A model generated the notes under the pieces. It was not told the DNA's origin and ran no database searches. It saw nothing but the letters and a program-made list of their open reading frames with translations. 64,000 nucleotides of DNA, from positions 62,001-126,000 of the IMG/VR virus record IMGVR_UViG_3300045999_010033. One strand, given 5' to 3'. A program made the position numbers and the translations under genes. Below, in pieces: positions 1,096-20,867 of the stretch. Position 1 is the first letter of the stretch. Each line of letters opens with the position of its first letter.

Positions 1096-2211
1096 TTAAT
1101 TTGAAAGGGGAAGTTTAATTGCCGGATGTGATTGGTAATTTAATATCTTAATATCGTTTGGTTTATAACACTCCCAATTATCTTTCTTGCAAAGGTAATC
1201 AGGTAATTTATCCAATTTAGGCAAATCATACGGCGTTCTTGTCAATTGCTCTTTCAATCCATCTATGTGATTGAGATAGATGTGACAATCTCCCAAATTA
1301 CCAATCACTTCTTCGGGAATCATATTGACTTCTTTGGCGATAATTTCTAATAGAAGTGCGTAGGATGCGATGTTGAATGGGAGCCCCAATCCCACGTCCA
1401 CTGACCTCTGTGACCAAATTAAAGAGATTGCTCTGGTTGGTATATTATGTTCTGATAATTGTTTTTCTGTGTAATAGAACCTGTAATCTTGAGGTAGCTT
1501 ATCTTTATCAATTACTCCTAAATGCTTATCCATCAACTTCACTCTCTCTGTCTCGTCTAACTCTCTCGTATAAAATTGAAACGAGTAGTGACACGGTGGC
1601 AAGACCATCTGGTCGAGTTCTCCAACATTCCAAGCACTCACAAGTATCCTCCTACTATCAGGGTCTGTCTTCAGTAGGTGAATCGCGTTTGCGATTTGGT
1701 CTGTATATTCGCCCGAACCATTATAATAATCTGCCCAGCTTCTCCATTGGTTACCGTAGATTGGTCCTAATTCTCCCCACATCTTTGCAAACTCATCATC
1801 GGTTTTGATTTTGTTGATGAATTGTTCTTTTGTAAAATGGACATAATTAGGATACCCACTATTAAACTCTAATCCATCAACTTTAAAGTGTTTCTCTCTA
1901 TCATAGAAGGTAATTGATGATATTTGAGTATTTTTATACCGTTTATAAGCATCCCCATCCCAAATATGGCATCCATTATCCACAAGATACTTAATGTTTG
2001 TGGAGCCGCGTAAGAACCACAGAAGTTCGGTCACCATTGTTTTCCATGCCATCTTCTTTGTAGTGAGAAGTGGAAATCCATCCTTCATAGAATGACGTAT
2101 GGTTCTACCAAATACTGATTTAGTTCCAGTACCGGTACGATCTCCTTTAGTGTATCCGTTTTGTAATATGTCTTTGACTAGATCTAAGTATTGTTGCTCT
2201 ATGTTACTCAT
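1096..2211 (-). CDS. thyA: thymidylate synthase with two large insertions
   Basis: DRTGTGT, ELLWFL, LPPCH, QRSVDVGLGLPFNIASY (Asn = dUMP-specific), DCHIY. Confidence 0.97.
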   Translation of the reverse strand: MSNIEQQYLDLVKDILQNGYTKGDRTGTGTKSVFGRTIRHSMKDGFPLLTTKKMAWKTMVTELLWFLRGSTNIKYLVDNGCHIWDGDAYKRYKNTQISSITFYDREKHFKVDGLEFNSGYPNYVHFTKEQFINKIKTDDEFAKMWGELGPIYGNQWRSWADYYNGSGEYTDQIANAIHLLKTDPDSRRILVSAWNVGELDQMVLPPCHYSFQFYTRELDETERVKLMDKHLGVIDKDKLPQDYRFYYTEKQLSEHNIPTRAISLIWSQRSVDVGLGLPFNIASYALLLEIIAKEVNMIPEEVIGNLGDCHIYLNHIDGLKEQLTRTPYDLPKLDKLPDYLCKKDNWECYKPNDIKILNYQSHPAIKLPLSN

Positions 2212-3249: not shown

Positions 3250-3795
3250 TTAATATCTTTCATAGTAATCAAATACTTCCTCTAATTGAGAAGGATCTTT
3301 AACCCACATAATCCAATCATCTTTCTCTATTTCTTCCTCTATTACATCAACATAGAATGTTTTTGGAGTAAATGGAAATCCTTTAATCCTTACTCTTATT
3401 TGATTCGTACTATTGATTGCATCCTCTCTTGTTAGATATAGCGGGCCTGTCCAAGTTGTACCATTTGGGCATCTCTTTACTATTGCGGTATTATAGGTGC
3501 ACGTTCCATCCGCGTATTTGAATACCGCACTATATCTTTTATTTTGAAGTACATCATCAAATACGTTTGCCCATTCATCATCCGTTCCTTGTACAGGAGA
3601 TAGTGGTTCAAATTTAGCAAGTTTACTAAAAATATGAATAACTCCAGCTGCCGACATCCCGGAGTGCCCTTGTTTGGAAAATACTTCGATTAATTCCATA
3701 ACGGCGTTTCCCGTCATTCCTTCATAGAAATCTCCTTCCTTCGAGAATAGTCCTGCTAATTCTAATTCTGATTTTGCGTGTTCTATTAGTGACAT
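3250..3795 (-). CDS. phage hypothetical protein
   Basis: 181-aa ORF with FSKQGHSGMSA segment; no assignable function. Confidence 0.75.
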   Translation of the reverse strand: MSLIEHAKSELELAGLFSKEGDFYEGMTGNAVMELIEVFSKQGHSGMSAAGVIHIFSKLAKFEPLSPVQGTDDEWANVFDDVLQNKRYSAVFKYADGTCTYNTAIVKRCPNGTTWTGPLYLTREDAINSTNQIRVRIKGFPFTPKTFYVDVIEEEIEKDDWIMWVKDPSQLEEVFDYYERY

Positions 3796-4548: not shown

Positions 4549-5559
4549 TTATTTTGTAATTGGTTGCGGGCCTCCTGCTGCACCGGTATCTGCTGCTTTT
4601 GCACGGATACCCATATCCTCTGCGAATTTGTTTGAACGTTTAACCAATGGAACAATAGGTTCATCAATTACCCTAACGTTCATAGAAATAGGTTTATCTG
4701 GATGTGCCGCGTTATGTGCAACAACCGCTGCCCAACGATGGTGTCCATCCAATACATACCCATCATTCGATATGTAAATAGGTGCAGTTATCTTAGCGTA
4801 TGCAGGATGGTCTGGGTTGTCAAGTACTTTACTCATTCCTGCCACTTTCACTCCAACCAATTCAGATTGTGTTGCTTTCAATCTGTCAGGTGGAACCGCC
4901 ATAGGTTTAGATACTTTGATACCTTTTTTGTTCAACATTTCTTTGAAAAACTCTTCGGTATCTGCTTCACCCGATTCATCCTTTGGAAGTTTATCAGCGG
5001 GCGAACCTGCTACCGGTGTTCCTTTAAATTGGGGCATATCTGCTCTTGGAATACCTTTGTTATCATCACAATAAAGGTTTGTTCCGGGAATACTCACCTG
5101 ACATAGATTGAAGTTTGGTGCTTTTTCTCCTTTCTCTTTTGCTTGCTTACCTAGCTCTGCAAGTTTATCTATGATGGTAGATATCTGCTGCCTTTCTATA
5201 TTAGAAACATCATCCAATCCTTTTTTAGATGTGTCTATTCCTGGTATCAATGATTTCAATTTTGTATCATCAATACCAGTTGTAGAAGTTTTTTCCGCAG
5301 AGCTCTTGAAATCAATATTTGAAGATTTTCCTGCAGGCGTTTGTGGAGTCGCAGTAGTATTTACTTTTGTAGTTTTATCTTTTTTGGAAGGTAATTTGCC
5401 GCCGTTTTTTTCTTTGGCAGTTTCTACTTCATCCGGAGTAGGTTTGTCATGAATATCTGGATTGAACGTTTTAACTTTATAAACGTTTCCTGTTTTCTTA
5501 TTTTTTACAATATCATCCTCATTGATGATATTGTAAAGCTTTCTTTCAATTTTATTCAT
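4549..5559 (-). CDS. ParB/sulfiredoxin-like domain protein with low-complexity N-terminus
   Basis: LKATQSEL ... PIYISNDGYVLDGHHRWAA (ParB-N DGHHR motif). Confidence 0.8.
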   Translation of the reverse strand: MNKIERKLYNIINEDDIVKNKKTGNVYKVKTFNPDIHDKPTPDEVETAKEKNGGKLPSKKDKTTKVNTTATPQTPAGKSSNIDFKSSAEKTSTTGIDDTKLKSLIPGIDTSKKGLDDVSNIERQQISTIIDKLAELGKQAKEKGEKAPNFNLCQVSIPGTNLYCDDNKGIPRADMPQFKGTPVAGSPADKLPKDESGEADTEEFFKEMLNKKGIKVSKPMAVPPDRLKATQSELVGVKVAGMSKVLDNPDHPAYAKITAPIYISNDGYVLDGHHRWAAVVAHNAAHPDKPISMNVRVIDEPIVPLVKRSNKFAEDMGIRAKAADTGAAGGPQPITK

Positions 5560-5678
5560 TACCCTTGCCCTCTGTAGTTTTTTTCTTTACGATTGTGCTT
5601 ATTAAAACTCTTTTGAGATTTTCCACGTTTTCTTTTACCGAATGAAATTTTCCTACTATCAGATGAAACTTTTGCCAT
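5559..5678 (-). CDS. small basic peptide (39 aa, not in ORF track)
   Basis: MAKVSSDSRKISFGKRKRGKSQKSFNKHNRKEKNYRGQG*; TAATG overlaps at both ends. Confidence 0.7.
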   Translation of the reverse strand: MAKVSSDSRKISFGKRKRGKSQKSFNKHNRKEKNYRGQG

Positions 5679-5890
5679 TATTTTGTTACTTTTTTAGTTG
5701 AACGTTTTTTAGGCACTTCCGTTGTAACTGCATCCGTTATTTGTGTTTCTACTACTTCTTTTTTAGGAGCCTTTACAATCTTTAGTGGCGTTTCTTTAGC
5801 CGCTTCAAGCACTGCTTTATCAATAGTAATTGGTAACTCTTTGTGTTGCTGCTTTTTGAATAAATTTTTAATAAACGAAAATAGTCCCAT
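5678..5890 (-). CDS. Lys-rich hypothetical protein
   Basis: MGLFSFIKNLF amphipathic start; downstream of TATATTTATAT motif. Confidence 0.65.
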   Translation of the reverse strand: MGLFSFIKNLFKKQQHKELPITIDKAVLEAAKETPLKIVKAPKKEVVETQITDAVTTEVPKKRSTKKVTK

Positions 5891-5904
5891 TTTGTTTTAG
5901 TTTA

Positions 5905-5915
5905 ATATAAATATA
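5905..5915 (-). promoter_or_regulatory. putative phage late-promoter motif
   Basis: TATATTTATAT, recurring in several intergenic gaps. Confidence 0.5.
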
Positions 5916-5924
5916 TAAAAGTTG

Positions 5925-7127
5925 TTAAAATCCTTTATTTGGAAAGCGAGTCCATCCATTTATCCAAATAGGTTTTGAAAATATTTCCATTTCGGATTTT
6001 GTATAAACGACCTCTTTACTTCCTTGTGAAATTGATTTGGTCTTCATTTCAGATGCCGTAAATAAGGCCGAAGTTGACCTGAAATTCAATAGTGGATCGT
6101 ATGCTTGAACTTCATTGTTTTCAAATTTAGAAACACCATCCTTATAAGATTGTGCCGTTTCATTTGATTCAATACTAAAACCACCTTTTTGGTATCCCAA
6201 AATTTTTGAATTGGTTATAGTGAATCGAGTTGCTCTTCTCCATCTTAATCCTAAATTATGGTTTGGTAGGGCGGTTGCATCAAATGGACCGACTAATATC
6301 ATACCTATTAATTTAGGATGTGTAAATGGTTGTGCGGATGAACCCGTTCCATCGTTATCACATTCCACACCATTTCCGGCATCACCATTATCTACAAATT
6401 TTGGGTCTCTTTTTGCTACACCACTTTCAATTGTACCACAATATCCGAAATCAAAATCAAAATCATCATCGGCGGTTGCATATGCATATAGGTTTTTACA
6501 ATTAACAGTACCACCGAAAAATTCAAAAGCATCATCGTTTGCGTAAACCGTTTGCACATTTTCGATGATAGTCCCACTACCTACACCGCCGAGAGTCAAT
6601 CCATTTATTTCCGAATTGGGCATTGCTGCAATACCGGCGTATTCAATTCGGACATACTTTAGAATCCCACTATTGTCTGCATCATTCGTTCCACCATACG
6701 GTCTTCCGATTCCGCCTTCGATTGTAGGTTCAGTAGAGCGGTTTGTTGTTGCTTTACCTAAAATTACAACGCCACCCCAATCGCCGGGTGCTCTTTCTCC
6801 TACGGGTTTGCCCGAAGTGAATACAATCGGTTTTTGGGCCGTTCCTTCTGCTATGATTTGTGCGCCCCTTTCAACAATCAATGCACCTTTTTCTGCTATA
6901 TCGGATACTATGGTAGTACCTGGTTGAATAACCAGTTTTGCTCCATCGGTCACATACACATATCCTTTTAGAGTCCAAGTTTTGTCGGATGTCAATGTAA
7001 TCGTGGTATTGATATTTCCATTCAATGTGGTCGATGTAGGAACATTTGGGGGTGGGTCTCCTCCTCCCAATTCTTTTTTACATCCAAATAATACGATAAT
7101 ACAAATACCTAAAAGTAAATTTTTCAT
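5925..7127 (-). CDS. surface lipoprotein, probable beta-helix, partner of TonB-dependent receptor
   Basis: Lipobox LFGC at Cys16; GDWGG, YVRIEYAG, EINGLTLGGVG, DDAFEFFGG, DDDFDFDFGY acidic repeats. Confidence 0.75.
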   Translation of the reverse strand: MKNLLLGICIIVLFGCKKELGGGDPPPNVPTSTTLNGNINTTITLTSDKTWTLKGYVYVTDGAKLVIQPGTTIVSDIAEKGALIVERGAQIIAEGTAQKPIVFTSGKPVGERAPGDWGGVVILGKATTNRSTEPTIEGGIGRPYGGTNDADNSGILKYVRIEYAGIAAMPNSEINGLTLGGVGSGTIIENVQTVYANDDAFEFFGGTVNCKNLYAYATADDDFDFDFGYCGTIESGVAKRDPKFVDNGDAGNGVECDNDGTGSSAQPFTHPKLIGMILVGPFDATALPNHNLGLRWRRATRFTITNSKILGYQKGGFSIESNETAQSYKDGVSKFENNEVQAYDPLLNFRSTSALFTASEMKTKSISQGSKEVVYTKSEMEIFSKPIWINGWTRFPNKGF

Positions 7128-9376
7128 AATTTCAAATTTAATGTCAATGAAACGGTTTGTTCGTTGTTTGTTTTTATTAGATTCCTTTTTGTTTGTAACT
7201 TTTGATAATAAACCGATGGTTGTGCTAATATATCACCTATTGCCAATTTAATATCACCTCGTTTGATTTTGCGAAGAAACACTACATCAATAACATCCCT
7301 AGCGTTTTCAAAAATATCTGCGTATCCCTGAAATCCTACTGCTGATATTCTATCTCCAACTCGATTGTAAGATATGTTAAGTGTGTTTTGTTTTCTTTTA
7401 ATGTTTACGCCTGAGTTTATTACATAGTTTGATTGTCCCTGCAATTGTCTTTTTATTTTATTCACATTTACTTCCGAGTTCATAAGAGATGCATTTGTGT
7501 ACACATCTAACCAATCTTTTATTTTCTTCCGAACCTCAACCTCTACTCCAAAAAGTGTAGCCCGATTAGGGTTGGTGTATGTAAGTAAAAGATTAGAAGG
7601 AACTGAACCATCTGCTACAATTTGTTCAATTGGTTTTAGAAAATATTTACCAAATGCCGAAACGGATACACTTTGATTATCTGATATGTAATTCTCCCAT
7701 TTAAGGTCAATGTTATAGATGTCCGATTTTTCTAAATTTGAATTACCCAATATTTGTGCATTCCTTACAAAATCATAATAAGCAAAATTGGCTACCTCTC
7801 TAAATTCAGGCCTGGCTAATGTTTTACTTACCGAAAACCTATACTTTGTTTTCTCTAAATTGTAAGAAAGGTTTACCGATGGGAGTAGGTCTAAATAGTT
7901 TCTATCTACAGTTATCGGTGTACCACTAAAATCGGATGTATTTACTTTGAATGTATTATATTCGGTTCTTAGACCGGTATTGAGTTTCCATTTACCCCAA
8001 GTATTATCATACATCGCATATCCACTTGCTAAGTCAAAATCGGAATTGTATTTATCGGTATTGTTTGTAATTTCATCCAACATATCGGAAGCAGTATATC
8101 TAAATACTCTGGCTTTAAATTCTCTAAACTTTTTAGTATATCCTGCTCCTACTTTAACCCTACCAAAATCTTTATTAAGATTTCCATTAAACGCGTTTTC
8201 ATCCATTATAGACCAAAACCGATATGTATCTCTCCAAGCGATAGTGTATGGTGTATTTACTCCTAATGATTTAGTTATAGGATTTACTCTATAATCCGGT
8301 TGCTCTCTGAATGTAAAATTATACCCTAAATTAAAGTCCCAATCTTTTACCTTTCCATCTAATTGAGAATTGATGATGAATGAGTTAATATGATTTGAAG
8401 CATTACTCAATACATTTTGTACATTATCATAATTATTGCCCACACGCGTAAGATATGAATCATCTTTTTGATAATTCAAAAGGGTCTTCCAACTATAACG
8501 ATTTTTTCCCAAATAAGTTAAATTCAGCAATCCATTGGCTTGAAGCCTTTTTGTGTATAAGGTATCTTTATAATCATATGCCAACTCCGTTGATGATTGG
8601 TAATCCGTTCTTTCAATATAGTTTAACCCATAGGAGTTTCTAATCGTTGAACTCAATATACCATTCCACTTACCTCGCTTATATCCGGCCGAAAAAGAAC
8701 CATTTAAGTTAGAAGGTGAAGTGAATCCTTTTGCAACTGGTGATTCTATCAACTTTGTGAATGCCCTTCTATCTCCATTTGAGCTAGTTCTGAATGCATA
8801 CGTGGATGGAAACCTTTGTGGGAACTCCGTTTCTCTTACTAAAGAGAATGATTTGAATGATGAAACCATTCCCAATCCACTACCTAATGATAGGTTAATG
8901 CTATTATCAAATACATCCTTTGTTGTAATTTGCACCAATCCTCCGGTCCAATCTCCAGGCAAATTAGCCGCAGCCGATTTGGCTATGATAATATTATCAA
9001 CCAACGACGTTGGAATAATATCAAACGAAAACGCCCTTCTATCGGGTTCGGTAGATGGCAGTAATGTTTTATTTAACATTGCGGAATTATATCTGTCTGC
9101 CAATCCCCTTACTAAAACAAACTTATCATTTTGTACCGTTACACCTGAAATTCTTTTTAATGCATCACTAACCGTCCTATCGGGTGTTTTCTTAATAAAT
9201 TCAATTGATAATCCATCTGATACTACATTTGAATTACGAATTGTTTTTATAACGGATATTTCTGTCGTTTTTTGTCCGGTAGTTTTAACTGATATTTCGG
9301 ATAGTGTTTTGTTGAAAACGGTATCCTGACATATTACTCCAATTGGTAGTAGTAGAAATAAAATTATGGATTTCAT
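7124..9376 (-). CDS. TonB-dependent receptor (compact, 750 aa)
   Basis: Signal peptide; plug motif DALKRISGVTVQ...VRGLADRYN; KTLARPEFRE; GNSNL; amphipathic beta-strand C-terminus. Confidence 0.9.
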   Translation of the reverse strand: MKSIILFLLLPIGVICQDTVFNKTLSEISVKTTGQKTTEISVIKTIRNSNVVSDGLSIEFIKKTPDRTVSDALKRISGVTVQNDKFVLVRGLADRYNSAMLNKTLLPSTEPDRRAFSFDIIPTSLVDNIIIAKSAAANLPGDWTGGLVQITTKDVFDNSINLSLGSGLGMVSSFKSFSLVRETEFPQRFPSTYAFRTSSNGDRRAFTKLIESPVAKGFTSPSNLNGSFSAGYKRGKWNGILSSTIRNSYGLNYIERTDYQSSTELAYDYKDTLYTKRLQANGLLNLTYLGKNRYSWKTLLNYQKDDSYLTRVGNNYDNVQNVLSNASNHINSFIINSQLDGKVKDWDFNLGYNFTFREQPDYRVNPITKSLGVNTPYTIAWRDTYRFWSIMDENAFNGNLNKDFGRVKVGAGYTKKFREFKARVFRYTASDMLDEITNNTDKYNSDFDLASGYAMYDNTWGKWKLNTGLRTEYNTFKVNTSDFSGTPITVDRNYLDLLPSVNLSYNLEKTKYRFSVSKTLARPEFREVANFAYYDFVRNAQILGNSNLEKSDIYNIDLKWENYISDNQSVSVSAFGKYFLKPIEQIVADGSVPSNLLLTYTNPNRATLFGVEVEVRKKIKDWLDVYTNASLMNSEVNVNKIKRQLQGQSNYVINSGVNIKRKQNTLNISYNRVGDRISAVGFQGYADIFENARDVIDVVFLRKIKRGDIKLAIGDILAQPSVYYQKLQTKRNLIKTNNEQTVSLTLNLKL

Positions 9377-9389
9377 AAATTGTTTTTGA

Positions 9390-9641
9390 TTAATCCTCTC
9401 CGTATAGTGAAAATCTTTTTACCGGTTTTTCAACTTCTTGCTCCATTACAACTTCAACTGTTCCTTTACGAGCATCCATATAAAAACGTGTTTCACCAGT
9501 TTGTTGATAGTGTCCTTCCAATGCATCTGTTAATGTTGGATAAACGGAAGAAGATTGGGCAGCATTTACTGCTACCCAACGGTCACCCGGCGGAACTCTT
9601 TTAAGGACAACTCGTTTTTCTTCTTTGATTTCTTTTTCCAT
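9390..9641 (-). CDS. hypothetical protein
   Basis: ORF track; packed in operon. Confidence 0.65.
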   Translation of the reverse strand: MEKEIKEEKRVVLKRVPPGDRWVAVNAAQSSSVYPTLTDALEGHYQQTGETRFYMDARKGTVEVVMEQEVEKPVKRFSLYGED

Positions 9642-9642
9642 A

Positions 9643-9849
9643 TCAGATTACTTCAAGTATTTTAGTGTCCGTTACTTTGGTTACTTCAAACTCATTTCTC
9701 ACACCCTCATCTCTGAACTTCTTTACAAGCTTTGCTTCTGCTTCCGTACAAGACATTGCATCAACGAGGTAAAGTTCTTTTACTTTTTTAATCTTTCCTT
9801 TTGCATCTTCGGTTTCCATTGCTACCGTAACTTGATAAAATTTTGTCAT
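9643..9849 (-). CDS. DUF4494-like protein (short)
   Basis: KKVKELYLVDAMSCTEAEAK resembles the Bacteroidota DUF4494 signature. Confidence 0.7.
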   Translation of the reverse strand: MTKFYQVTVAMETEDAKGKIKKVKELYLVDAMSCTEAEAKLVKKFRDEGVRNEFEVTKVTDTKILEVI

Positions 9850-9869
9850 AACTTTTAATTTTGTTTACA

Positions 9870-9900
9870 CAATATACGAAATTTATTTAAGTAATCCAAT
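9870..9900 (-). promoter_or_regulatory. Bacteroidota sigma-type promoter
   Basis: ATTG-N20-TATATTG. Confidence 0.6.
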
Positions 9901-10425
9901 TATTTTTTTAATGGAATCCGCATCAACCTTTACTGTATGATATGGTATTGAGTTAGCCTGCAGCATTGTTAGTATCTCTTTATCAATACGCAAAGAATCT
10001 TCCATACTTTGAAACCTTCCATTTGGGTCATAAAATTCAGCATTACGTTCTAAGTATATGTTTATAGAATCATAATGCATATGAAGGTCTACAATAAATT
10101 CATCAAACTTGTTGGAGTAAAATATGGCAGGATATTCAGGCACCGCATCATATCTTCCTTTATAAATGAGTCCAAATAGTATTGGAGAGTCTACAATTAC
10201 ATAATCAACTTGTCCGTAAAGTCTTGCTATGTTTCGATGTTGATTTGCGGTAATATATAATTGGTCTTTGATTGCATGAGTATTGTGTTCCCATGCTACA
10301 AGCTTTGGATATTCGTATGGCATTTCAACGTTATATCCCAATCGTTTCATTTCATAAAAAAGACCAGCCGCTTGGGTTGATTTTCCTGCACCTGGTCCTG
10401 AAAATAGATTTATTATCTTTGTCAT
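9883..10425 (-). CDS. P-loop kinase/ATPase (AAA_28/NadR-like)
   Basis: INLFSGPGAGKST Walker A; VIVDSP Walker B; GRFQ lid. Confidence 0.75.
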   Translation of the reverse strand: MTKIINLFSGPGAGKSTQAAGLFYEMKRLGYNVEMPYEYPKLVAWEHNTHAIKDQLYITANQHRNIARLYGQVDYVIVDSPILFGLIYKGRYDAVPEYPAIFYSNKFDEFIVDLHMHYDSINIYLERNAEFYDPNGRFQSMEDSLRIDKEILTMLQANSIPYHTVKVDADSIKKIIGLLK

Positions 10426-10430
10426 AAAAT

Positions 10431-10462
10431 AAAAAAAGGGAGAGAGTGTTTAACTCCCTCCC
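10431..10462 (-). terminator. intrinsic terminator after the large TonB-dependent receptor
   Basis: GGGAGGGAGT-TAAAC-ACTCTCTCCC stem-loop followed by a T7 run. Confidence 0.85.
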
Positions 10463-10473
10463 ATTTTATTAGG

Positions 10474-13400
10474 TTATTTACCAAAAATGTATCGTACACC
10501 CAATTGTGCTGTCCACACATCAAATACGGATGAGTTTCTTTGATAAGTATCACGTGCGAGAATTGTTGAACCATCAGGGTTTCTTTGAGTAGAAAGCCTA
10601 TATGTTGGTTCTCCAGCTGCGTTATAACTTACAAAGTTCAATAGAGCCGGTGCGGTTGCTCTTTGAGAAACACCCCATTTATCATTCATTAGATTTCCTG
10701 CGTTAAGAATATCAAACCTAACTTGGAATGTATTCTTTTGGTCTTTTACTTTTACATAAAAGTCCTGCATCACAGAGAAATCGAACCTATGAAGGAATGG
10801 AAGTACAAATCCGTTTCTTTCAGCGTATTGTCCACGACGACCACTAAGATATGGGTCTTGCAAAATGAATGCATCAAATGCTGTCTGTTGTTCTACTTCG
10901 GTGTAAGTCTTACTACCAACGGTGAGTGGTGCGAACTTAACTTCTGCTGCTGCTTTTGGTACATATACCAATTCATTATCACGAACCCTGTCACCATTAA
11001 GGTCACCGGCTACAAAGTAAGAGAATGGATTAGATTTTGCACCTACATAACCCAATGTTACGGTCGTTGCTCCACCAAACTTTCCACCATACTCTTTACG
11101 ATATCCGATAAGACCTACGATTCTATGTGGAAGGTTATTATCTGAAAGAGATAGTCCGAGGTTGTTATTACCATTTACGGAACGAGCACTTTGCCAGCTA
11201 CCACTTGCGATAGAACCTGCACTCATGTAATCTCTTGCTTCAGAAAGAGTATATGCTACTGAACCCCAAAGACCTTTAGCGTAAGGCTTTTCCAACTTAA
11301 CAATCATTGCTTTATGGTAAGGGCCATCCTTTGATGTCAATACCGCTGCCATTGATACGTTATCGTTGATACGAGTACCAGGGTCATTGTTGGCAAACTT
11401 TGCTCTATTATCAGAGCCACTCAAAGTTCCAACGGGTGATTCCAAATTAGCGTTGTAGTAATGAACTGCGTTAAGTGATTTATTATAAAATACTTCTGCA
11501 GATGCTACGAGTCCGAACCAAGGCAATTTTTGATCAACTGCCAAGTTACTACGCCATACTTGCGGAAACTTATAGTTCGGGTCGGTGAATGCCAAGTCAA
11601 ATGTAGTAGGAAGCGTTGGTGTTATCGGAGTGAAATACTGCGCCGGGTTGGCGGTGAATCCATAACCTGCAGCTGCTGCTCCACTTACATCAATAAATCC
11701 AGTGAGTACACCATTGTTTCCAACCTGATTAGAGATGAATACATACGGAGGGCGACCGGTGAAGATACCAGTACCACCACGAACTTGTGTGGCTTTCTTT
11801 CCTTCAACATCCCAGTTGAAACCGAACCGAGGCTCCCATAGGATTTGAGTTTCAGGCATTACCCCGGTATTGAATTTTTCACCATTAGCGAATGCCATAG
11901 CAGATACTGCTTTGTTTTCAAGTGCCGTATTTCCGATACCGATAACTGCTGCACGAAGACCAAAAGTTAATTTAAGATCTTTGCGGATATCCCACGCATC
12001 TTGTCCATATACATCAAATCGTGTGGTTTCCAAAACTTGCATTGGTTCTGCTCCACCCGATAGAGCGGAATATCTCATTTGAAAACGAGCAGGTGCAAGT
12101 GTTGAAGGTTTGCCACCATTTGCCAACGATTGATTTGCTGCGTTGTAAAAATCTGCCAAGCTATTAAAGATGTAAACACCATTAGAAGCGGGATAGAATA
12201 GATTATTAGATTTATATGCTTCGAAATTTACACCACCAGTAAAGGTATGTTTGTCAGCATATTTCGTAAGGTTGTTCGTAATGTGGAATGTACCATAGTT
12301 CAATTTGTTACCCGGAGTGAATGGGTCGAATCCTACGGAAGTGTAGGTTGCTGAACCTTCACGAATATCGATTGTGGGGAACATTTGAGAAAGATATGCA
12401 CGGTCTTCAATTTGCCTATCATATCCTACGATGAAATTGTTATGGAGTGTATTTGTGAACTTTGAGTTAAGTTCAACCACTGCTGAACGAGTGTTATCCA
12501 TAATAATATAACCACTATTCTTAAACGACATTGCGTTGAATTGTGTGGTTCGGTTTCCTGCACCAGCTGATTGAGAGTTTGAAATGTTAATCTCTGCTGA
12601 TGAATTATGATGTACATAACGTGCAGTCAATTTGTGTTTTGGATTAATATTCCAGTCAACCCTTACAAGAAACTTATTAGATTCGTTTGTATTAGAGTAA
12701 CCTTCCCAGGCGCCGGTTTCGTAATTGAATTTAGATTTCATAAATTCCGAAAGGGTCTTCATATCGGAATACTTAACACGACTTACTTGCGAACCTGTGA
12801 GTGGTGATCCTTCGGAAATCCAAGTGGTGCCGGGTTCGGTTCTTTCAAGTGTTTCATAGTTACCAAAGATAAAAAGTTTGTTCTTAATGATTGGTGCTCC
12901 CATACGGAATCCCCAAACCTTTTCATCAAACTTTGCCGCCGTTACAGGTACTCCATATGCACTATTTCCAACAAATTTGGAAGAGTTGTCACGGGTGAAT
13001 CCATATACCGAACCTTCGATATTGTTAGTACCACTACGCGTTACTGCGTTAATACCTGCACCAGTGAATCCGCTTTGACGAACATCATAGGGTGCTACGT
13101 TTACTTGCAATTGCTCAATGGCATCCAATGAAATTGCAGATGCTCCAGTTCTACCACCCGCTTGTGCAGATGAACCCAAACCGAAGTTATTATTGAATTG
13201 TGAACCATCAATCGTAAAGTTATTCATACGAGAGTCTTGCGCTCCGAATGATGCTCCATTACCAAATGGTGTGTATTTTGTTACACCATCAATAGTCCTT
13301 GCACCCGTAATGGGTACGCTTTGCAATTCTCTCCTTCCAAATTGTTGGGAGGCACCGGTTCTATCTTTTGAAAAGATTGGATTTCTTGTTCCCGTCACAA

Positions 13401-13749
13401 CGATTTCATTGAGTGAAGATGCGACATCAATGAGAACAAAATCAACGTTTGTGGTAAGACCCAATTGTGTGTTTACATCCTTAATCTCACCTTTGTTAAA
13501 TCCAACAAATGAAGCATGAATTGTGTATGGTCCTCCGACTCTTGCAGCGGGAATTACATACACACCGGATTTGTTAGTGTTAGTAAAGTATTCAGTACCG
13601 GTAGGTGTGTGTGTTACATGGACACTTGCACCACTTAATACTTCACCTTTTGAGTTTTTTACAACACCGGAAATCGTTGATGTTGTAATTTGGCTAAAAC
13701 CCAACAAACTTGCTGCTACTAAAAGTAGCGTCATCATTGTTTTTTTCAT
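10474..13749 (-). CDS. Oar-like TonB-dependent receptor with N-terminal carboxypeptidase-regulatory-like domain
   Basis: Signal peptide; ISGVV...GGPYTI domain; NNFTIDG, GFTGAGINAVTRSGTN plug; PRFGFNWDV, RGGTGIFTGRPP, GDLNGD; ends QLGVRYIF. Confidence 0.92.
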   Translation of the reverse strand: MKKTMMTLLLVAASLLGFSQITTSTISGVVKNSKGEVLSGASVHVTHTPTGTEYFTNTNKSGVYVIPAARVGGPYTIHASFVGFNKGEIKDVNTQLGLTTNVDFVLIDVASSLNEIVVTGTRNPIFSKDRTGASQQFGRRELQSVPITGARTIDGVTKYTPFGNGASFGAQDSRMNNFTIDGSQFNNNFGLGSSAQAGGRTGASAISLDAIEQLQVNVAPYDVRQSGFTGAGINAVTRSGTNNIEGSVYGFTRDNSSKFVGNSAYGVPVTAAKFDEKVWGFRMGAPIIKNKLFIFGNYETLERTEPGTTWISEGSPLTGSQVSRVKYSDMKTLSEFMKSKFNYETGAWEGYSNTNESNKFLVRVDWNINPKHKLTARYVHHNSSAEINISNSQSAGAGNRTTQFNAMSFKNSGYIIMDNTRSAVVELNSKFTNTLHNNFIVGYDRQIEDRAYLSQMFPTIDIREGSATYTSVGFDPFTPGNKLNYGTFHITNNLTKYADKHTFTGGVNFEAYKSNNLFYPASNGVYIFNSLADFYNAANQSLANGGKPSTLAPARFQMRYSALSGGAEPMQVLETTRFDVYGQDAWDIRKDLKLTFGLRAAVIGIGNTALENKAVSAMAFANGEKFNTGVMPETQILWEPRFGFNWDVEGKKATQVRGGTGIFTGRPPYVFISNQVGNNGVLTGFIDVSGAAAAGYGFTANPAQYFTPITPTLPTTFDLAFTDPNYKFPQVWRSNLAVDQKLPWFGLVASAEVFYNKSLNAVHYYNANLESPVGTLSGSDNRAKFANNDPGTRINDNVSMAAVLTSKDGPYHKAMIVKLEKPYAKGLWGSVAYTLSEARDYMSAGSIASGSWQSARSVNGNNNLGLSLSDNNLPHRIVGLIGYRKEYGGKFGGATTVTLGYVGAKSNPFSYFVAGDLNGDRVRDNELVYVPKAAAEVKFAPLTVGSKTYTEVEQQTAFDAFILQDPYLSGRRGQYAERNGFVLPFLHRFDFSVMQDFYVKVKDQKNTFQVRFDILNAGNLMNDKWGVSQRATAPALLNFVSYNAAGEPTYRLSTQRNPDGSTILARDTYQRNSSVFDVWTAQLGVRYIFGK

Positions 13750-13798
13750 ACATTTTGTTTAGTTAAAAAATATGCATCTTTTTCTTTTTGATGCTATC

Positions 13799-13830
13799 TA
13801 AAGATAAGGAAAGTTTTTAACATTCCCAAT
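13799..13830 (-). promoter_or_regulatory. Bacteroidota sigma-type promoter for the Oar-like receptor
   Basis: ATTG-N20-TATCTTTA. Confidence 0.55.
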
Positions 13831-14370
13831 TTATAGTTCTTCATTGGATTTGGGCTCATAGTGCTTTTCGTTACGATTGCCTACTAATAGGAAAAAGCAA
13901 TTGAAGCATAGAGGTCTAATGTTGTCTAATATACGATTATTTAAATCACCATCCAAAAAATCTAATAACAATGGATATTTACCATCCGTTATTCGCGCTT
14001 CACTAAACCCGCAACAGCTGCAGACACGTGGTATGTATCCGCTATCAAACATTTTATTTTTGAATCGGTGTAGAGGATACTTTGGATGTTTTCCGTTAAT
14101 GAGGTCTTCAATGTGATATGAGCGATTCCGAATGTGTTTTTTTCTATCAATACCTATCCCTGCGGGGTTTTTTAGACGCTCCATGATTCCATACATTTTA
14201 GCATACTTTTTGTATGTATTGTATGATATTCCGAGTGTACGAGCTGCTTCTGCTGCCGATTTTGATTTTTCTTGGGCAGCGAGTATTTGTGATTCTAAAA
14301 TGGGCCTTGCGCCTAATCCCGGCTTTGTAATTCTAGTAATAACCGGCTTGTCTTGATTGGAATCCTCCAT
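13831..14370 (-). CDS. HTH + Zn-binding degenerate HNH-like protein
   Basis: SAAEAARTLGISYNTYKKY HTH; CSCCG ... LDFLDGDLNN...NIRPLCFNC with catalytic His replaced. Confidence 0.7.
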   Translation of the reverse strand: MEDSNQDKPVITRITKPGLGARPILESQILAAQEKSKSAAEAARTLGISYNTYKKYAKMYGIMERLKNPAGIGIDRKKHIRNRSYHIEDLINGKHPKYPLHRFKNKMFDSGYIPRVCSCCGFSEARITDGKYPLLLDFLDGDLNNRILDNIRPLCFNCFFLLVGNRNEKHYEPKSNEEL

Positions 14371-14377
14371 AGACGTG

Positions 14378-14794
14378 TTAAATAAGTAACCTTAATAATT
14401 TTTTAAATGTTGTATCCAAATCGGTAGTTGTATCTAAATCGGCGAAGTTTTCAATGGGGGGTTCGTATTCAGTATTAATCCCTCTACCCTGCCTTGCCTT
14501 TGTATGACAATAAACCTCAAGCATTTTACTTTCCGATTTAAATCGTTCACGCTCATCTCGTTTTGGAGATTGTATAGAAACAATTACATCATCACCTTTA
14601 TCGGATAAATATCTAGCTATGTAAAACGCTATATTTGCGTATGATTCTTCTGTAAACTTATCTTTTAAGTCCGATTCATCAATAACGTGAACCGACTTTC
14701 TCCAATTGCGTTTTTCCGCAGATAACCAAATTTTAAGTTTTTGAGCAATTGCAGTTTTGCCACTACCGCTCTGTCCAGTGAACCAGTATATCAT
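14378..14794 (-). CDS. adenylyl-sulfate kinase (CysC)-like protein, divergent
   Basis: IYWFTGQSGSGKT, EVYC, EYEPP; LDGD replaced by IDES. Confidence 0.65.
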   Translation of the reverse strand: MIYWFTGQSGSGKTAIAQKLKIWLSAEKRNWRKSVHVIDESDLKDKFTEESYANIAFYIARYLSDKGDDVIVSIQSPKRDERERFKSESKMLEVYCHTKARQGRGINTEYEPPIENFADLDTTTDLDTTFKKLLRLLI

Positions 14795-14810
14795 AACCTT
14801 TTAGTCTATT

Positions 14811-15047
14811 TTAAGAAAGTACATAAACAGAGCCCGCGGTAACGGATACACTAGTCATATAGCATGGAAAGGGTACACCTGGCGTAATATCTGCTATTTG
14901 AATAGTACCACCACCTTCTAAGTTTATGGAGCCAGATGCGACGGATGCTCGCATTACTCCCCACGCAGATATAGATCCGGATAAATTATAACTACCAGAT
15001 TGACCGGATGTGAGTGTTGTACTTTTATATGCTCTGTAATTTATCAT
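14811..15047 (-). CDS. small beta-rich hypothetical protein, possibly structural
   Basis: Gly/Ser/Thr-rich with alternating hydrophobic pattern. Confidence 0.55.
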   Translation of the reverse strand: MINYRAYKSTTLTSGQSGSYNLSGSISAWGVMRASVASGSINLEGGGTIQIADITPGVPFPCYMTSVSVTAGSVYVLS

Positions 15048-17411: not shown

Positions 17412-18194
17412 TTATATTGTTGATACACCTGGCTTTTGAACCACTATTGTTGCACATTCTTGCGCGAATTTAATTGCACTTTCTATATTAGAAGATAAAA
17501 TATATTCACAAACTAATCCAGATACAAAGGTATCACCTGCACCCGAAACATCTTTTATCTGAACTTTTTCAACTGGGTATATTTTTCCTTTATGCTGACA
17601 CCCCTTACTTGATAGTGTTATGATTAATTTATCTTCAATATCTAATTCTTTCAAAGAATATTCGGTGTGCTCATACTCCACATGATTTATCTTAATGTAT
17701 GTAGCACTTTTACACCAAGATCCTAATATTTTTTTTGTGTCTATAAACACATTTATATTGTTTTCACATATGAACCTAATATCTTCTTCTTCTAAAAACC
17801 CTTTATCATAATCACTAATAATAATTGCATCTATTTTAGTATCATTATAGATGTTGTTATTTATTTTTTTTAATGTTGAAGAATTTATCGGTGTGGCTTT
17901 ATCGTTAAAATCTACTCTAAGTAATATTTGTCCCGACCTTTCATCAACATATCTTTTTTTAATTATTTTGTTATCATTTTTAATAAAGATAACACTTACA
18001 CCCAGCGCTTCTAAATTGGAAACAACATTTCCTGCCATTCCATCATTCGAAGTTGTGTTGGTTGGATTGAATACTGGAACCGGCGCTTCGGGTGCCAATC
18101 TGATTGCAGTTCCATATACAAATTCATCTACTCCATAATCTCCTATAACCAATATACTGAAATCTTTAAATTTTTCCTTTTTCAAATTTTTCAT
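17412..18194 (-). CDS. HldE/RfaE-type heptose-7-phosphate kinase (PfkB family)
   Basis: RLAPEAPVPV, SDYDKG, DVSGAGDTF. Confidence 0.88.
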   Translation of the reverse strand: MKNLKKEKFKDFSILVIGDYGVDEFVYGTAIRLAPEAPVPVFNPTNTTSNDGMAGNVVSNLEALGVSVIFIKNDNKIIKKRYVDERSGQILLRVDFNDKATPINSSTLKKINNNIYNDTKIDAIIISDYDKGFLEEEDIRFICENNINVFIDTKKILGSWCKSATYIKINHVEYEHTEYSLKELDIEDKLIITLSSKGCQHKGKIYPVEKVQIKDVSGAGDTFVSGLVCEYILSSNIESAIKFAQECATIVVQKPGVSTI

Positions 18195-18744
18195 TTATTA
18201 TTTCCTTTGTTTTTTTGAATCCTATTTCACAATTCGTTTTCCAATGAGAGTGGTCGCCACCATCTGAAACCCATTTATACGCACTAAATTTAACACCATA
18301 TCTTTTACATACTTTTGCAATTGCAAAACACTCCATATCAATTATGGAACACCGCTTTATCATTTCCAAATAATATGGTGAATATTTTATTTTCTGATTT
18401 TCATCGTAAAAATAATCGGTTGTAAAACAACTAATATTAGATTTTGAATCTAAAACTATTTGTTTAGATATTGATTCAAATGGAGTTTTACCATACTCAT
18501 CTAATGGGGTAGTATCTATATCTTGATAAACCAATCCAACTTTGACCACGTCTCCAATGGGCAAAGATAACGATCCACATGAACCGATGTTTATTATTTC
18601 ATCATACCCCAAACTAAATGCCATAGTCGCGGTCATAGCGGCGTTTATTTTACCAACACCACTAAACATTACCGGATATCCTAAAATATTTCCTTGAATA
18701 CCTACTTCATCGGGAACTGCTACTATAAAAACCTTTTTATTCAT
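18166..18744 (-). CDS. mtnN: MTA/SAH nucleosidase-like protein
   Basis: SGVGKINAA, INIGSCG, DMECFA, KWVSD. Confidence 0.75.
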   Translation of the reverse strand: MNKKVFIVAVPDEVGIQGNILGYPVMFSGVGKINAAMTATMAFSLGYDEIINIGSCGSLSLPIGDVVKVGLVYQDIDTTPLDEYGKTPFESISKQIVLDSKSNISCFTTDYFYDENQKIKYSPYYLEMIKRCSIIDMECFAIAKVCKRYGVKFSAYKWVSDGGDHSHWKTNCEIGFKKTKEIINEKFEKGKI

Positions 18745-19213
18745 ATTTAATTAAACTCTTAACATTTGTTGGTTTGTGTAAAAATGTTAAATCAATTAAC
18801 ACTAATTTATCTACCACTTCGTAACCCGCCTTTTTACATAGTATTTCAACCGCCTCCATAGTTCCACCTGTCGCATACACATCATCAACTATAACTACCT
18901 TCCCACTTCCTGGTTGCATTTCTAATATATCCTCACCATATTCCAAAGTGTATGTTTGTTGAATTACCGGTGGTGGTAGTTTTCCTTTTTTTCTACACAT
19001 AATCAAACCACCATTTTTAGTAGATAACGCCGAAGCGAATATAAATCCTCTAGCATCAATACCTACCCAATAATCGGGTTGATTAACTAAATTTCTCATT
19101 TCTTCAATTACCTTTGGAAATAAAGATGATTTTAAAAGTGGAGAAACATCTTTGAACGATATTCCAGTTTTTGGAAAATCGGGTACTTCATTTACAAGTT
19201 CTTTCCAATTCAT
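18737..19213 (-). CDS. apt: adenine phosphoribosyltransferase
   Basis: PDFPKTGISFKD, GIDARGF, RKKGKLP, LEYG, IVDDVYATGGT. Confidence 0.93.
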   Translation of the reverse strand: MNWKELVNEVPDFPKTGISFKDVSPLLKSSLFPKVIEEMRNLVNQPDYWVGIDARGFIFASALSTKNGGLIMCRKKGKLPPPVIQQTYTLEYGEDILEMQPGSGKVVIVDDVYATGGTMEAVEILCKKAGYEVVDKLVLIDLTFLHKPTNVKSLIKYE

Positions 19214-19218
19214 TTTTT

Positions 19219-20860: not shown

Positions 20861-20867
20861 ATTTATT

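What the first reader, a model, noticed from the sequence alone, without database searches (positions are those of the whole stretch)
5925..13749. Phage-encoded outer-membrane uptake module: two TonB-dependent receptors and a surface lipoprotein
About 7 kb of intact Bacteroidota-type transport genes interleaved with phage genes. The Oar-like receptor has its own promoter and strong terminator and looks more GC-rich than its flanks. The second receptor is compact, lacks an N-terminal extension, and overlaps its lipoprotein gene. Possible roles: nutrient scavenging in infected cells (phosphorus compounds, given PhoH), or surface remodelling/superinfection exclusion.
Basis: partly seen in the sequence, partly recalled or inferred. 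Interest (0 to 1): 0.7.

Follow-up and report, generated by a model that had tools for sequence, protein, structure and literature searches.

The report
Lake jumbo phage carries outer-membrane transporters
A 221-kb lake-water phage of Bacteroidota really does carry three intact, conserved outer-membrane genes: an Oar-like TonB-dependent transporter shared by a large phage clade, and a transporter-plus-lipoprotein pair related to a bacterial phosphate-starvation uptake system, so it probably boosts phosphorus scavenging in infected cells, which is untested.

Summary
The window lies in a 221,095-bp IMG/VR phage record rated 100% complete by CheckV. It has three intact minus-strand genes:
- an Oar-like TonB-dependent transporter (10474-13749);
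- a compact TonB-dependent transporter (7124-9376);
- a beta-helix lipoprotein (5925-7127) that overlaps the transporter by 4 nt.

This is not an assembly chimera. Contigs from independent lake metagenomes bridge every junction. GC3 matches the phage. dN/dS is 0.05-0.19.

The genes are two separate units, not one module:
- The Oar-like gene is on at least 80 related viral contigs, which form one clade next to Bacteroidota homologues. It is in 3 of 4 complete relatives picked by DNA polymerase alone. A freshwater metatranscriptome holds contigs 97-99% identical to it.
- The transporter-lipoprotein pair is a sporadic insertion, found on at least 11 viral contigs. Close relatives seem phage-restricted; cellular homologues reach only 24-45% identity for the transporter.

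Those cellular pairs sit beside phoBR in 32 of 60 loci, or among OprP, PlcP-like, PhoU and Pit genes. The Flavobacterium johnsoniae pair of this type, Fjoh_0545/0546, is induced by phosphate depletion.

Best reading: outer-membrane nutrient-uptake genes, probably for phosphorus. Superinfection exclusion remains possible. Phage-encoded TonB-dependent receptors have already been reported, so this is a new variant of a known kind.

The parts
10474..13749 (-). Oar-like TonB-dependent transporter gene (1091 aa). It has a signal peptide, a CarboxypepD_reg N-terminal domain, a TonB-box-like NEIVVTG motif, a plug and a large OMP_b-brl_4 barrel.
   Evidence: Pfam hits. Present on at least 80 related viral contigs. 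These copies form one phage clade sister to Bacteroidota homologues. dN/dS is 0.05-0.13 in close pairs. The plug region is 92% conserved. Metatranscriptome contigs are 97-99% identical.
10438..10462 (-). Intrinsic-terminator-like hairpin plus T-run, 12 nt after the Oar stop codon.
13750..13830 (-). 81-nt AT-rich intergenic region upstream of the Oar gene. It is a candidate promoter region, not demonstrated.
   Evidence: Sequence. The sigma-70 scan is at chance level.
7124..9376 (-). Compact TonB-dependent transporter gene (750 aa): signal peptide, TonB-box-like LSEISVK motif, plug and barrel. It has no N-terminal CarboxypepD_reg domain.
   Evidence: Pfam and NCBIfam hits. AlphaFold2 model and Foldseek matches. 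Close relatives are all phage-borne where context was checked. Cellular homologues reach at most 36-45% identity. The plug is 95% conserved among 128 copies. dN/dS is 0.08-0.19.
5925..7127 (-). Parallel beta-helix lipoprotein gene (400 aa, PF28492), translationally coupled to the transporter by a 4-nt overlap. It is a homologue of the low-phosphate-inducible 'FII' / BT4056-type lipoproteins.
   Evidence: Lipobox. AlphaFold2 model with pLDDT 90 and beta-helix matches. Family assignment. It always follows the transporter in phages and in bacteria. dN/dS is 0.06-0.13. The complex prediction gives weak support.
5678..5890 (-). 70-aa ORF between the cassette and the conserved backbone gene 4549-5559. 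It lies within the stretch that relatives lacking the cassette do not have.
9883..10425 (-). AAA_28 / thymidylate-kinase-like phage gene between the Oar gene and the backbone. It is not part of the transport genes and is absent at this position in several relatives.
9390..9849 (-). Two small conserved phage backbone ORFs: a 68-aa DUF4494 N-terminal part and an 83-aa ORF. They separate the two transport units.

Best explanation
Shown:
- This lake-water jumbo phage of a Bacteroidota host carries two independent, long-resident sets of outer-membrane genes under purifying selection.
- Unit 1 is an Oar-like TonB-dependent transporter with its own terminator. It is inherited across a large clade of related phages.
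- Unit 2 is a two-gene insertion: a plug-and-barrel TonB-dependent transporter translationally coupled to a parallel beta-helix lipoprotein. It is a divergent, apparently phage-restricted branch of a two-gene system found across Bacteroidota.
- In bacteria that system sits next to phoBR or among OprP, PlcP-like, PhoU and Pit genes. In Flavobacterium johnsoniae it is strongly induced by phosphate depletion.

Inferred mechanism:
- During the long infection the phage genes are expressed from phage transcription units.
- The proteins are exported by the host Sec, BAM and lipoprotein-export machinery.
- The lipoprotein sits on the outer face of its transporter as a substrate-capturing partner.
- Both transporters are energised by the host TonB-ExbBD, because the phage encodes no TonB.
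- The infected cell therefore imports more of a scarce nutrient than the host programme would allow. For the pair this is most likely a phosphorus-containing compound, which would feed synthesis of a 221-kb DNA genome in phosphorus-poor lake water.
- This would be an outer-membrane counterpart of cyanophage pstS and phoA (own knowledge).

The substrate of the Oar-like transporter is unknown.
For: Phage identity and assembly:
- The record is 221 kb and rated 100% complete by CheckV. 263 of 289 ORFs lie on one strand.
- It encodes DNA polymerase, ribonucleotide reductase, DnaB, primase and tail fibres.
- Independent lake metagenome contigs bridge all junctions.

Conservation:
- The Oar-like gene is on at least 80 viral contigs, flanked by homologues of this phage's genes.
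- It is in 3 of 4 complete relatives chosen by DNA polymerase alone.
- The pair is on at least 11 viral contigs and on two 238-287 kb phage contigs.

Selection:
- dN/dS is 0.05-0.19.
- Plug domains are 92-95% conserved and TonB-box-like motifs are kept.
- GC3 is phage-like.

Transporter fold.

Lipoprotein:
- Beta-helix fold and PF28492 family.
- The pairing is conserved in 60 or more bacterial loci.
- Complex prediction gives weak support. The score is 0.52 against a best control of 0.00. That mark was reached by 58 of 80 solved complexes and 2 of 110 mismatched pairs. At 0.60 or under it was reached by only 7 of those 80 solved complexes and by both mismatched pairs that passed. The runs agree in at least 64% of contacts, and partner pLDDT is at least 90.

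Phosphate link:
- A PhoB/PhoR-like pair lies about 220 bp upstream, divergently oriented, in 32 of 60 bacterial loci.
- It is the best PhoB candidate in the two genomes checked.
- The closest cellular cassette found lies among Porin_O_P, Metallophos, GT1, PhoU_div and PHO4 genes.
- PMC8115612 Table 1 lists Fjoh_0545 (a transporter with PF07715, PF13715 and PF14905) and Fjoh_0546 (an 'FII' lipoprotein with the pectin-lyase fold) in the phoBR operon. They are induced with log2 fold changes of 8.0 and 9.9 under phosphate depletion.
- The BT4055-BT4056 'lid' prediction points the same way.

Transcription: freshwater metatranscriptome contigs are 97-99% identical across 10814-13774, while the neighbouring gene 13831-14370 has none.
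Against: - No expression evidence exists for the transporter-lipoprotein cassette. The one RNA run has no contigs over 5582-9324. Its strain may simply lack the cassette, and contigs cannot show absence.
- The phage transporter is only 24-45% identical to the Pho-linked bacterial ones and sits on a very long branch, so substrate and role may have changed.
- The substrate of the bacterial system is itself unknown.
- The phage copy is not next to phoBR and has no intergenic region of its own.
- The phage carries no PstS, OprP, TonB or obvious phosphatase to complete a pathway.
- One of the two closest cellular cassettes (G022) has no Pho neighbours.
- The closest bacterial Oar homologues have no Pho context.
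- This copy lacks the N-terminal domain and ends in Leu, where 51 of 60 bacterial homologues end in Phe.
- The complex prediction gives only weak support.
- The RNA run may contain DNA.
Confidence: 0.5

Rival explanations
1. Superinfection exclusion or receptor remodelling. TonB-dependent transporters are common phage receptors. The phage-made variants, or the lipoprotein acting as a cap, would replace, mask or dilute the host receptor used by this or competing phages, or would act as decoys on released vesicles and debris. Transport would be irrelevant.
For: - The authors of the 2026 huge-phage outer-membrane-protein survey favour this idea, by analogy with lambda Lom-LamB.
- The phage copies are strongly diverged from cellular ones.
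- The N-terminal domain is dispensable in many copies.
- The cassette is sporadic and mobile among relatives, as expected of a conflict gene.
- T5 Llp, a lipoprotein that blocks FhuA, is a precedent (own knowledge).
Against: - The most conserved parts are the periplasm-facing plug and the region around the TonB box (95% and 92% majority identity). The barrel and loops are not more conserved.
- That pattern fits a working, TonB-gated transporter better than a surface mask.
- The whole two-gene architecture of a cellular uptake system is kept, including translational coupling.
- No receptor is known for these phages.
Confidence: 0.22
2. General, non-phosphorus nutrient or cofactor import: carbohydrate, iron, or cobalamin for the phage's class II-like ribonucleotide reductase. 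Alternatively an Oar-like export role, as in Myxococcus where Oar is needed to secrete the protease PopC.
For: - The beta-helix fold resembles polysaccharide lyases and binders.
- The ribonucleotide reductase at 49460-51322 scores best with the adenosylcobalamin-dependent RTPR family.
- Oar is required for PopC secretion (PMC6434023).
- The marine megaphage transporter was read as SusC-like carbohydrate uptake.
Against: - No cobalamin or other riboswitch lies near eight bacterial homologue loci.
- There is no SusC or SusD family match.
- Fold matches to lyases are weak, with TM 0.3-0.37.
- No candidate secreted substrate gene is linked to the Oar gene.
- The genomic context of the pair's homologues is specifically phosphate-related.
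Confidence: 0.15
3. Artefact: host DNA mis-assembled or mis-binned into a viral contig, or dead cargo picked up recently and not used.
For: - Total GC of the Oar gene is above the genome mean.
- IMG/VR contains some contaminated records (own knowledge).
Against: - Junction-spanning contigs come from at least three independent samples and studies.
- The same genes sit between phage genes on dozens of contigs of up to 323 kb, including one with direct terminal repeats.
- Orientation is the same as the rest of the genome and GC3 is phage-like.
- dN/dS is 0.05-0.19.
Confidence: 0.02

Closest known systems
Flavobacterium johnsoniae phoBR-operon transporter Fjoh_0545 with 'FII' lipoprotein Fjoh_0546 (Lidbury et al. 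2021, PMC8115612); the same type as Bacteroides BT4055-BT4056 (bioRxiv 10.1101/2023.03.17.533168); the lipoprotein is distantly related to Caulobacter ElpS.
   Same: - A two-gene unit: a Plug + OMP_b-brl_3 transporter directly followed by a pectin-lyase-fold (beta-helix) lipoprotein.
- Sister phage copies also carry the PF13715 N-terminal domain.
- Homology was shown through Flavobacterium, Chryseobacterium and other loci with the same phoBR linkage.
   Different: - The phage transporter is only 24-45% identical, and the lipoprotein 33-55% identical.
- There is no phoBR, Pho gene or own regulatory region.
- This copy lacks the N-terminal domain.
- Close relatives were found only on phage contigs.
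- Fjoh_0545 and Fjoh_0546 themselves were not aligned here, because no sequence was available.
Oar of Myxococcus xanthus and the Oar-like (CarboxypepD_reg + OMP_b-brl_4) transporters of Bacteroidota.
   Same: - Same domain architecture and length.
- Bacteroidota homologues reach 50-71% identity, and 294 of 401 sampled genomes have a match.
   Different: - It is encoded by a phage clade and forms its own branch.
- Function in Bacteroidota is unknown. Only the Myxococcus protein has a shown role, in PopC secretion.
Phage-encoded beta-barrel outer-membrane proteins of huge phages, including 22-stranded TonB-dependent receptors (bioRxiv 10.64898/2026.10.24.761521), and the 'SusC' receptor of marine megaphage Mar_Mega_1 (PMC9723777).
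   Same: - Large-genome phages carry TonB-dependent receptors.
- Freshwater phages are the largest source.
- Phosphate-acquisition genes were noted near some aquatic phage outer-membrane proteins.
- A Lak-phage receptor is transcribed.
   Different: - Those reports are surveys. In the text read, they do not describe an Oar-like gene conserved across a phage clade.
- They also do not describe a transporter-plus-surface-lipoprotein pair homologous to the Pho-regulon system.
Cyanophage phosphate auxiliary genes pstS and phoA (own knowledge).
   Same: A phage carries host-derived phosphorus-acquisition genes in phosphorus-poor water.
   Different: - Those are periplasmic or inner-membrane-linked proteins regulated by the host PhoBR.
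- These are outer-membrane proteins with no sign of Pho regulation.
Bacteroidota transporter / surface-lipoprotein complexes: SusCD, BtuB-BtuG, XusA-XusB.
   Same: - The architecture is a TonB-dependent barrel plus a surface-exposed lipoprotein partner.
- XusA is among the structural matches.
   Different: - The lipoprotein here is a beta-helix, not a SusD TPR fold or a beta-propeller.
- There is no SusC family match.

Membership tests
TonB-dependent transporter (gene 7124-9376) | Plug domain inside a 22-stranded beta-barrel | tested here: met
   Pfam Plug scores 30.2 bits (cut-off 23.9) and OMP_b-brl_3 scores 98.7 bits. The AlphaFold2 model (pLDDT 80.6) matches PhuR, FecA and PfeA at E about 1e-23 to 1e-21, TM 0.6-0.7.
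TonB-dependent transporter (gene 7124-9376) | N-terminal TonB box that engages TonB | tested here: inconclusive
   An LSE(I/V)x(V/I)(K/R) motif lies in the expected place and is kept across 128 copies, but it is moderately variable. Binding was not tested. The phage has no TonB of its own.
TonB-dependent transporter (gene 7124-9376) | C-terminal aromatic residue of the beta-signal | tested here: not met
   Phage copies end in ...NL, whereas 51 of 60 bacterial homologues end in F. Eight bacterial homologues also end in L, so this does not exclude function.
Oar-like transporter (gene 10474-13749) | CarboxypepD_reg N-terminal domain plus the OMP_b-brl_4 (PF25183) barrel | tested here: met
   63.2 bits (cut-off 32.3) and 181.8 bits (cut-off 30). 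Bacteroidota homologues reach 50-71% identity.
Oar-like transporter (gene 10474-13749) | Role in protein secretion, as for M. xanthus Oar and PopC | not testable with these tools
   Known only from PMC6434023. No linked substrate gene was seen.
Pho-regulon transporter + 'FII' beta-helix lipoprotein system (Fjoh_0545/0546 type) | Transporter with Plug + OMP_b-brl_3 (with or without CarbopepD_reg_2), immediately followed by a pectin-lyase-fold lipoprotein | tested here: met
   The architecture matches Table 1 of PMC8115612. The N-terminal domain is absent here but present in sister phage copies.
Pho-regulon transporter + 'FII' beta-helix lipoprotein system (Fjoh_0545/0546 type) | Genomic linkage to phoBR or other Pho genes | tested here: not met
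   This holds for the cellular homologues: 32 of 60 loci, plus the L188 cluster. It does not hold for the phage copy, whose neighbours are phage genes.
Pho-regulon transporter + 'FII' beta-helix lipoprotein system (Fjoh_0545/0546 type) | Induction by phosphate depletion and a role in phosphorus acquisition | not testable with these tools
   Shown only for F. johnsoniae, by transcriptome and proteome (PMC8115612).
SusC/SusD | SusC/RagA family barrel with a SusD-family lipoprotein | tested here: not met
   The phage proteins have no TIGR04056 or SusD hit. The lipoprotein is a beta-helix.
Phage auxiliary metabolic gene (moron) | Host-type gene inside a bona fide phage genome, conserved among relatives and under purifying selection | tested here: met

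The most novel reading that the evidence does not exclude
A large clade of freshwater Bacteroidota jumbo phages equips infected cells with its own TonB-dependent import machinery at the outer membrane. One part is a near-core Oar-like transporter. The other is a mobile transporter-lipoprotein pair derived from the host phosphate-starvation regulon but freed from PhoBR control. Viral phosphorus acquisition in lakes would then begin at the outer membrane. The phage-specific branch of the pair would have evolved its own properties, such as loss of the N-terminal domain and an altered C-terminus.
Probability: 0.35. Interest if true: 0.75.

Novelty: new variant of a known kind. Interest (0 to 1): 0.6.

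Why it matters
Lakes are often phosphorus-limited, and a 221-kb DNA phage needs a great deal of phosphorus.

- Known viral phosphorus genes (pstS, phoA, phoH) act in the periplasm or cytoplasm. An outer-membrane, TonB-powered uptake system carried by phages would add a new step at which viruses rewire nutrient flow.
- It would also give a natural, compact variant of a bacterial phosphate-starvation system whose substrate is still unknown.
- The clade is large: 537 IMG/VR stretches encode a related DNA polymerase. The Oar-like gene is kept in most complete relatives examined, so any effect would be ecologically widespread.
- If the genes instead block superinfection, they would be a new class of receptor-level exclusion factor in Bacteroidota phages.

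Tried and rejected
- Megablast of 5000-15000 against 50,697 GenBank phage records found no match.
- Sequence searches of the three proteins against PDB chains found nothing usable.
- A sigma-70 promoter scan gave chance-level hits, so the 'own promoter' claim stays unverified.
- The idea that the 750-aa form is the phage form and the 825-aa form the host form was rejected. Both forms sit in syntenic jumbo-phage contigs. They interleave on the tree, yet all short forms share one in-frame deletion junction.
- Cobalamin uptake for the class II-like ribonucleotide reductase was considered. No riboswitch was found at eight bacterial homologue loci, so it is not supported.
- A Pho context for the Oar-like gene was sought. 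The neighbours of the two closest bacterial homologues are unrelated: a fasciclin protein, another transporter, DivIVA and LigB. The low-phosphate-inducible 'pf13620' transporter Fjoh_3841 could not be compared because no sequence was available.
- Other phosphorus or energising genes were sought in the phage. No PstS, OprP or TonB_C was found. The Metallophos hits are uninformative.
- The pattern-based genome scan finds only what shares its peptide words. It was therefore complemented by a full protein search of 401 sampled Bacteroidota genomes. Closer cellular relatives outside that sample cannot be excluded.
- Names of the closest bacterial genomes (G176 and others) are not available, so the host genus was not determined.

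Full report
**What is there**

The window is bases 62001-126000 of a 221,095-bp IMG/VR virus record that CheckV rates 100% complete. 263 of 289 ORFs are on the minus strand. The record encodes these phage-typical proteins:
- replication: a family B-type DNA polymerase, a ribonucleotide reductase, a DnaB-like helicase and a primase;
- PhoH, ClpP and ThyA;
- a Tad3 anti-Thoeris homologue;
- collagen-like tail fibres.

- **10474-13749** encodes a 1091-aa protein with a CarboxypepD_reg domain and the OMP_b-brl_4 barrel. This is the Oar-type architecture.
- **7124-9376** encodes a 750-aa protein with Plug and OMP_b-brl_3. Its AlphaFold2 model (pLDDT 80.6) is a plug inside a barrel. It matches the 22-stranded transporters PhuR, FecA and PfeA, and also XusA of the Bacteroides XusAB complex.
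- **5925-7127** encodes a 400-aa lipoprotein with lipobox LFGC. Its model (pLDDT 90) is a right-handed parallel beta-helix with weak likeness to pectate lyases, alginate epimerases and tailspikes. It belongs to PF28492 Beta_helix_4.

- The 4-nt overlap, the missing N-terminal domain, the hairpin terminator at 10462-10438 and the raised GC of the Oar gene are all correct.
- The promoter claim cannot be checked with a sigma-70 scan, which is at chance level.

**Not a chimera, not dead cargo**

- The stretch is held by many lake and freshwater metagenomes from different studies.
- In three of them, contigs cross every junction between transport genes and phage genes. Those from X3 are identical to the window, and those from X6 and X7 are mostly about 95-99% identical.
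- GC3 of the three genes is 0.26-0.30, inside the genome's 0.264 +/- 0.073. The higher total GC of the Oar gene therefore reflects its amino-acid make-up.
- dN/dS between unsaturated pairs of phage copies is 0.05-0.19 for all three genes.

**Two units, not one module**

*The Oar-like gene*
- It was found on at least 80 IMG/VR contigs of up to 323 kb. In nearly all of them it is surrounded by homologues of this phage's own genes, though in several different neighbourhoods.
- On a tree, about 50 distinct phage copies form one supported clade, sister to a group of Bacteroidota genes.
- One bacterial copy (G176, 70% identical, in a 44% GC chromosomal context with no other phage-like genes) nests inside that clade with moderate support.
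- A second set of phage contigs carries a very different Oar-like gene (37-38% identity) on a separate deep branch.
- 537 IMG/VR stretches encode a related DNA polymerase. Among the best 80, four complete relatives were identified by polymerase similarity alone. Three of these have the Oar-like gene, and one of those three has direct terminal repeats.

*The transporter-lipoprotein pair*
- It is rarer. It was found on 11 other viral contigs and on two 238-287 kb metagenome contigs, always as a pair and often with the same 4-nt overlap. Only one of the four complete relatives has it, at another position.
- Relatives that keep the local backbone run Oar gene, small ORFs, then gene 4549-5559, without the pair and without the AAA_28 gene. 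Both are therefore insertions.
- One X7 contig joins 5920 to 9390, exactly skipping the pair. Only 26 nt lie on the shorter side of that joint, so this is a weak hint of a strain without it.

**Where the pair comes from**

- The top 120 database hits to the transporter are 72-99% identical.
- Every hit whose context I could read is on a phage contig, for both the 750-aa and the 825-aa forms.
- The best match in 401 sampled Bacteroidota genomes is 36% identical over the full length, with segments up to 45%. The pattern scan of species genomes gave 24-36%.
- On the tree, a very long branch separates the phage group from the cellular genes.
- Short and long forms interleave on that tree, yet all short forms share one in-frame deletion junction just after the signal peptide. 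This suggests a single deletion spread by recombination.
- In spite of the distance, almost every cellular homologue is followed by a homologue of the beta-helix lipoprotein at 33-55% identity, sometimes two in tandem. All of these carry lipoboxes.

**The functional lead**

- In 32 of 60 bacterial loci, an OmpR-type regulator and a histidine kinase lie divergently about 220 bp upstream of the transporter. They are orthologous across loci, at 56-100% identity for the regulator.
- Their best NCBIfam matches are PhoB and PhoR/PnpS, below the curated cut-offs.
- In both genomes checked, this regulator is the best PhoB candidate in the genome.
- The closest cellular cassette found (L188) lies in a cluster made of a phosphate-selective porin, the transporter, the lipoprotein, a calcineurin-like phosphoesterase and a glycosyltransferase. 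A divergent PhoU-like gene and a PHO4 (Pit) phosphate transporter sit beside it. A second close cassette (L187) has no such neighbours.
- This arrangement matches the phoBR operon of Flavobacterium johnsoniae described by Lidbury et al. In that operon, the transporter Fjoh_0545 (PF07715, PF13715, PF14905) and the pectin-lyase-fold lipoprotein 'FII' Fjoh_0546 are among the most strongly induced genes and exoproteins under phosphate depletion. FII is distantly related to the phosphate-starvation lipoprotein of Caulobacter (PMC8115612).
- A separate study predicted that the Bacteroides homologue BT4056 sits on the outer face of its transporter BT4055.
- My own complex prediction for the phage barrel and lipoprotein gives weak support:
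  - The score is 0.52 against a best control of 0.00.
  - That mark was reached by 58 of 80 solved complexes and 2 of 110 mismatched pairs.
  - At 0.60 or under it was reached by only 7 of those 80 solved complexes and by both mismatched pairs that passed.
  - The runs agree in at least 64% of contacts, and partner pLDDT is at least 90.

**How it most likely works**

*Shown*
- The genes are intact, phage-resident and conserved.
- They have transporter and beta-helix folds.
- They are homologous to a Pho-linked cellular pair.
- Their plug domains are the most conserved parts, at 95% and 92% majority identity, and TonB-box-like motifs are retained.
- The phage has no TonB.

*Inferred*
- The proteins are made during infection and inserted by host machinery.
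- They are energised by the host TonB and raise the import of a scarce nutrient.
- For the pair, that nutrient is most likely a phosphorus compound.

*Transcription*
- The only direct hint concerns the Oar-like gene. A freshwater metatranscriptome holds contigs 97-99% identical across 10814-13774.
- The adjacent gene 13831-14370 and the pair have none.
- Contigs show presence, not absence, and RNA libraries can contain DNA.

*Open points*
- The substrate of the Oar-like transporter is unknown. Its nearest bacterial homologues have no informative neighbours.
- Superinfection exclusion by receptor replacement or masking, as proposed for huge-phage outer-membrane proteins in general, remains a serious rival. 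It is less consistent with the conservation pattern.

**Comparison with what is known**

- Phage-encoded TonB-dependent receptors have been noted in a marine megaphage and related freshwater genomes (PMC9723777).
[quoted passage not shown] It mentions phosphate-acquisition genes near some of them and shows transcription of a Lak-phage receptor.
- The general phenomenon is therefore known. This case appears to add three things:
  - a clade-wide, vertically retained Oar-like transporter;
  - a transporter-plus-surface-lipoprotein pair in phages that is homologous to the Pho-regulon TBDT-FII system;
  - an apparently phage-restricted branch of that family, with a recurrent form lacking the N-terminal domain.

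I rate it a new variant of a known kind, of moderate to good interest. The function is still inferential.

Noticed in passing
window 3250-3795 (-): A 181-aa protein matches Pfam Tad3, the type I Thoeris inhibitor, at 124.7 bits. It is a probable anti-defence gene just downstream of the transport region.
   Followed up: no
window 49460-51322 (-): The phage ribonucleotide reductase scores best with the adenosylcobalamin-dependent RTPR family, TIGR02505, at 269 bits. That is below the 340 cut-off. The phage may therefore depend on B12.
   Followed up: partly
window 1096-2211 (-), 17412-20899, 30725-33417; G000 141461-147999: ThyA is about 100 aa longer than the Pfam model. Also present are a DegT aminotransferase, a PfkB kinase, several glycosyltransferases and a 1220-aa methyltransferase-containing protein. 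This gene set could serve DNA hypermodification or sugar synthesis.
   Followed up: no
window 9390-9849 (-): A 68-aa ORF matches only the first half of DUF4494. It is followed, in another frame, by an 83-aa ORF. The same split arrangement is kept in relatives L015 and L024. These could be two genes or a programmed frameshift.
   Followed up: partly
window 5920 / 9390 (run X7): One metagenome contig joins 5920 to 9390, skipping exactly the transporter-lipoprotein pair. The shorter side of the joint is only 26 nt. This may be a co-occurring strain without the cassette.
   Followed up: partly
L080-L091 (IMG/VR contigs): A second, very different Oar-like gene (37-38% identity) occurs in another set of related phage contigs. 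It often lies next to a homologue of the AAA_28 gene 9883-10425. This suggests an independent acquisition.
   Followed up: partly
L164 / L177 (G176:C5:49591-52860): A bacterial chromosomal Oar-like gene, 70% identical and in a 44% GC context, nests inside the phage Oar clade with SH-aLRT support of 90. This may be a phage-to-bacterium transfer.
   Followed up: partly
L093 versus L094 (two contigs of one JGI sample): Two syntenic jumbo-phage contigs from the same sample carry the short and the long form of the transporter. Their dN is 0.025 and dS is 0.13. Both forms therefore co-circulate.
   Followed up: partly
window 4549-5559 (-): A 336-aa protein of unknown function (phrog_2859) is conserved in relatives. 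It is represented in the metatranscriptome run at about 95% identity.
   Followed up: no
G000 137219-141403 and 149540-152218: Very long collagen-like tail-fibre proteins of 1394 and 892 aa.
   Followed up: no
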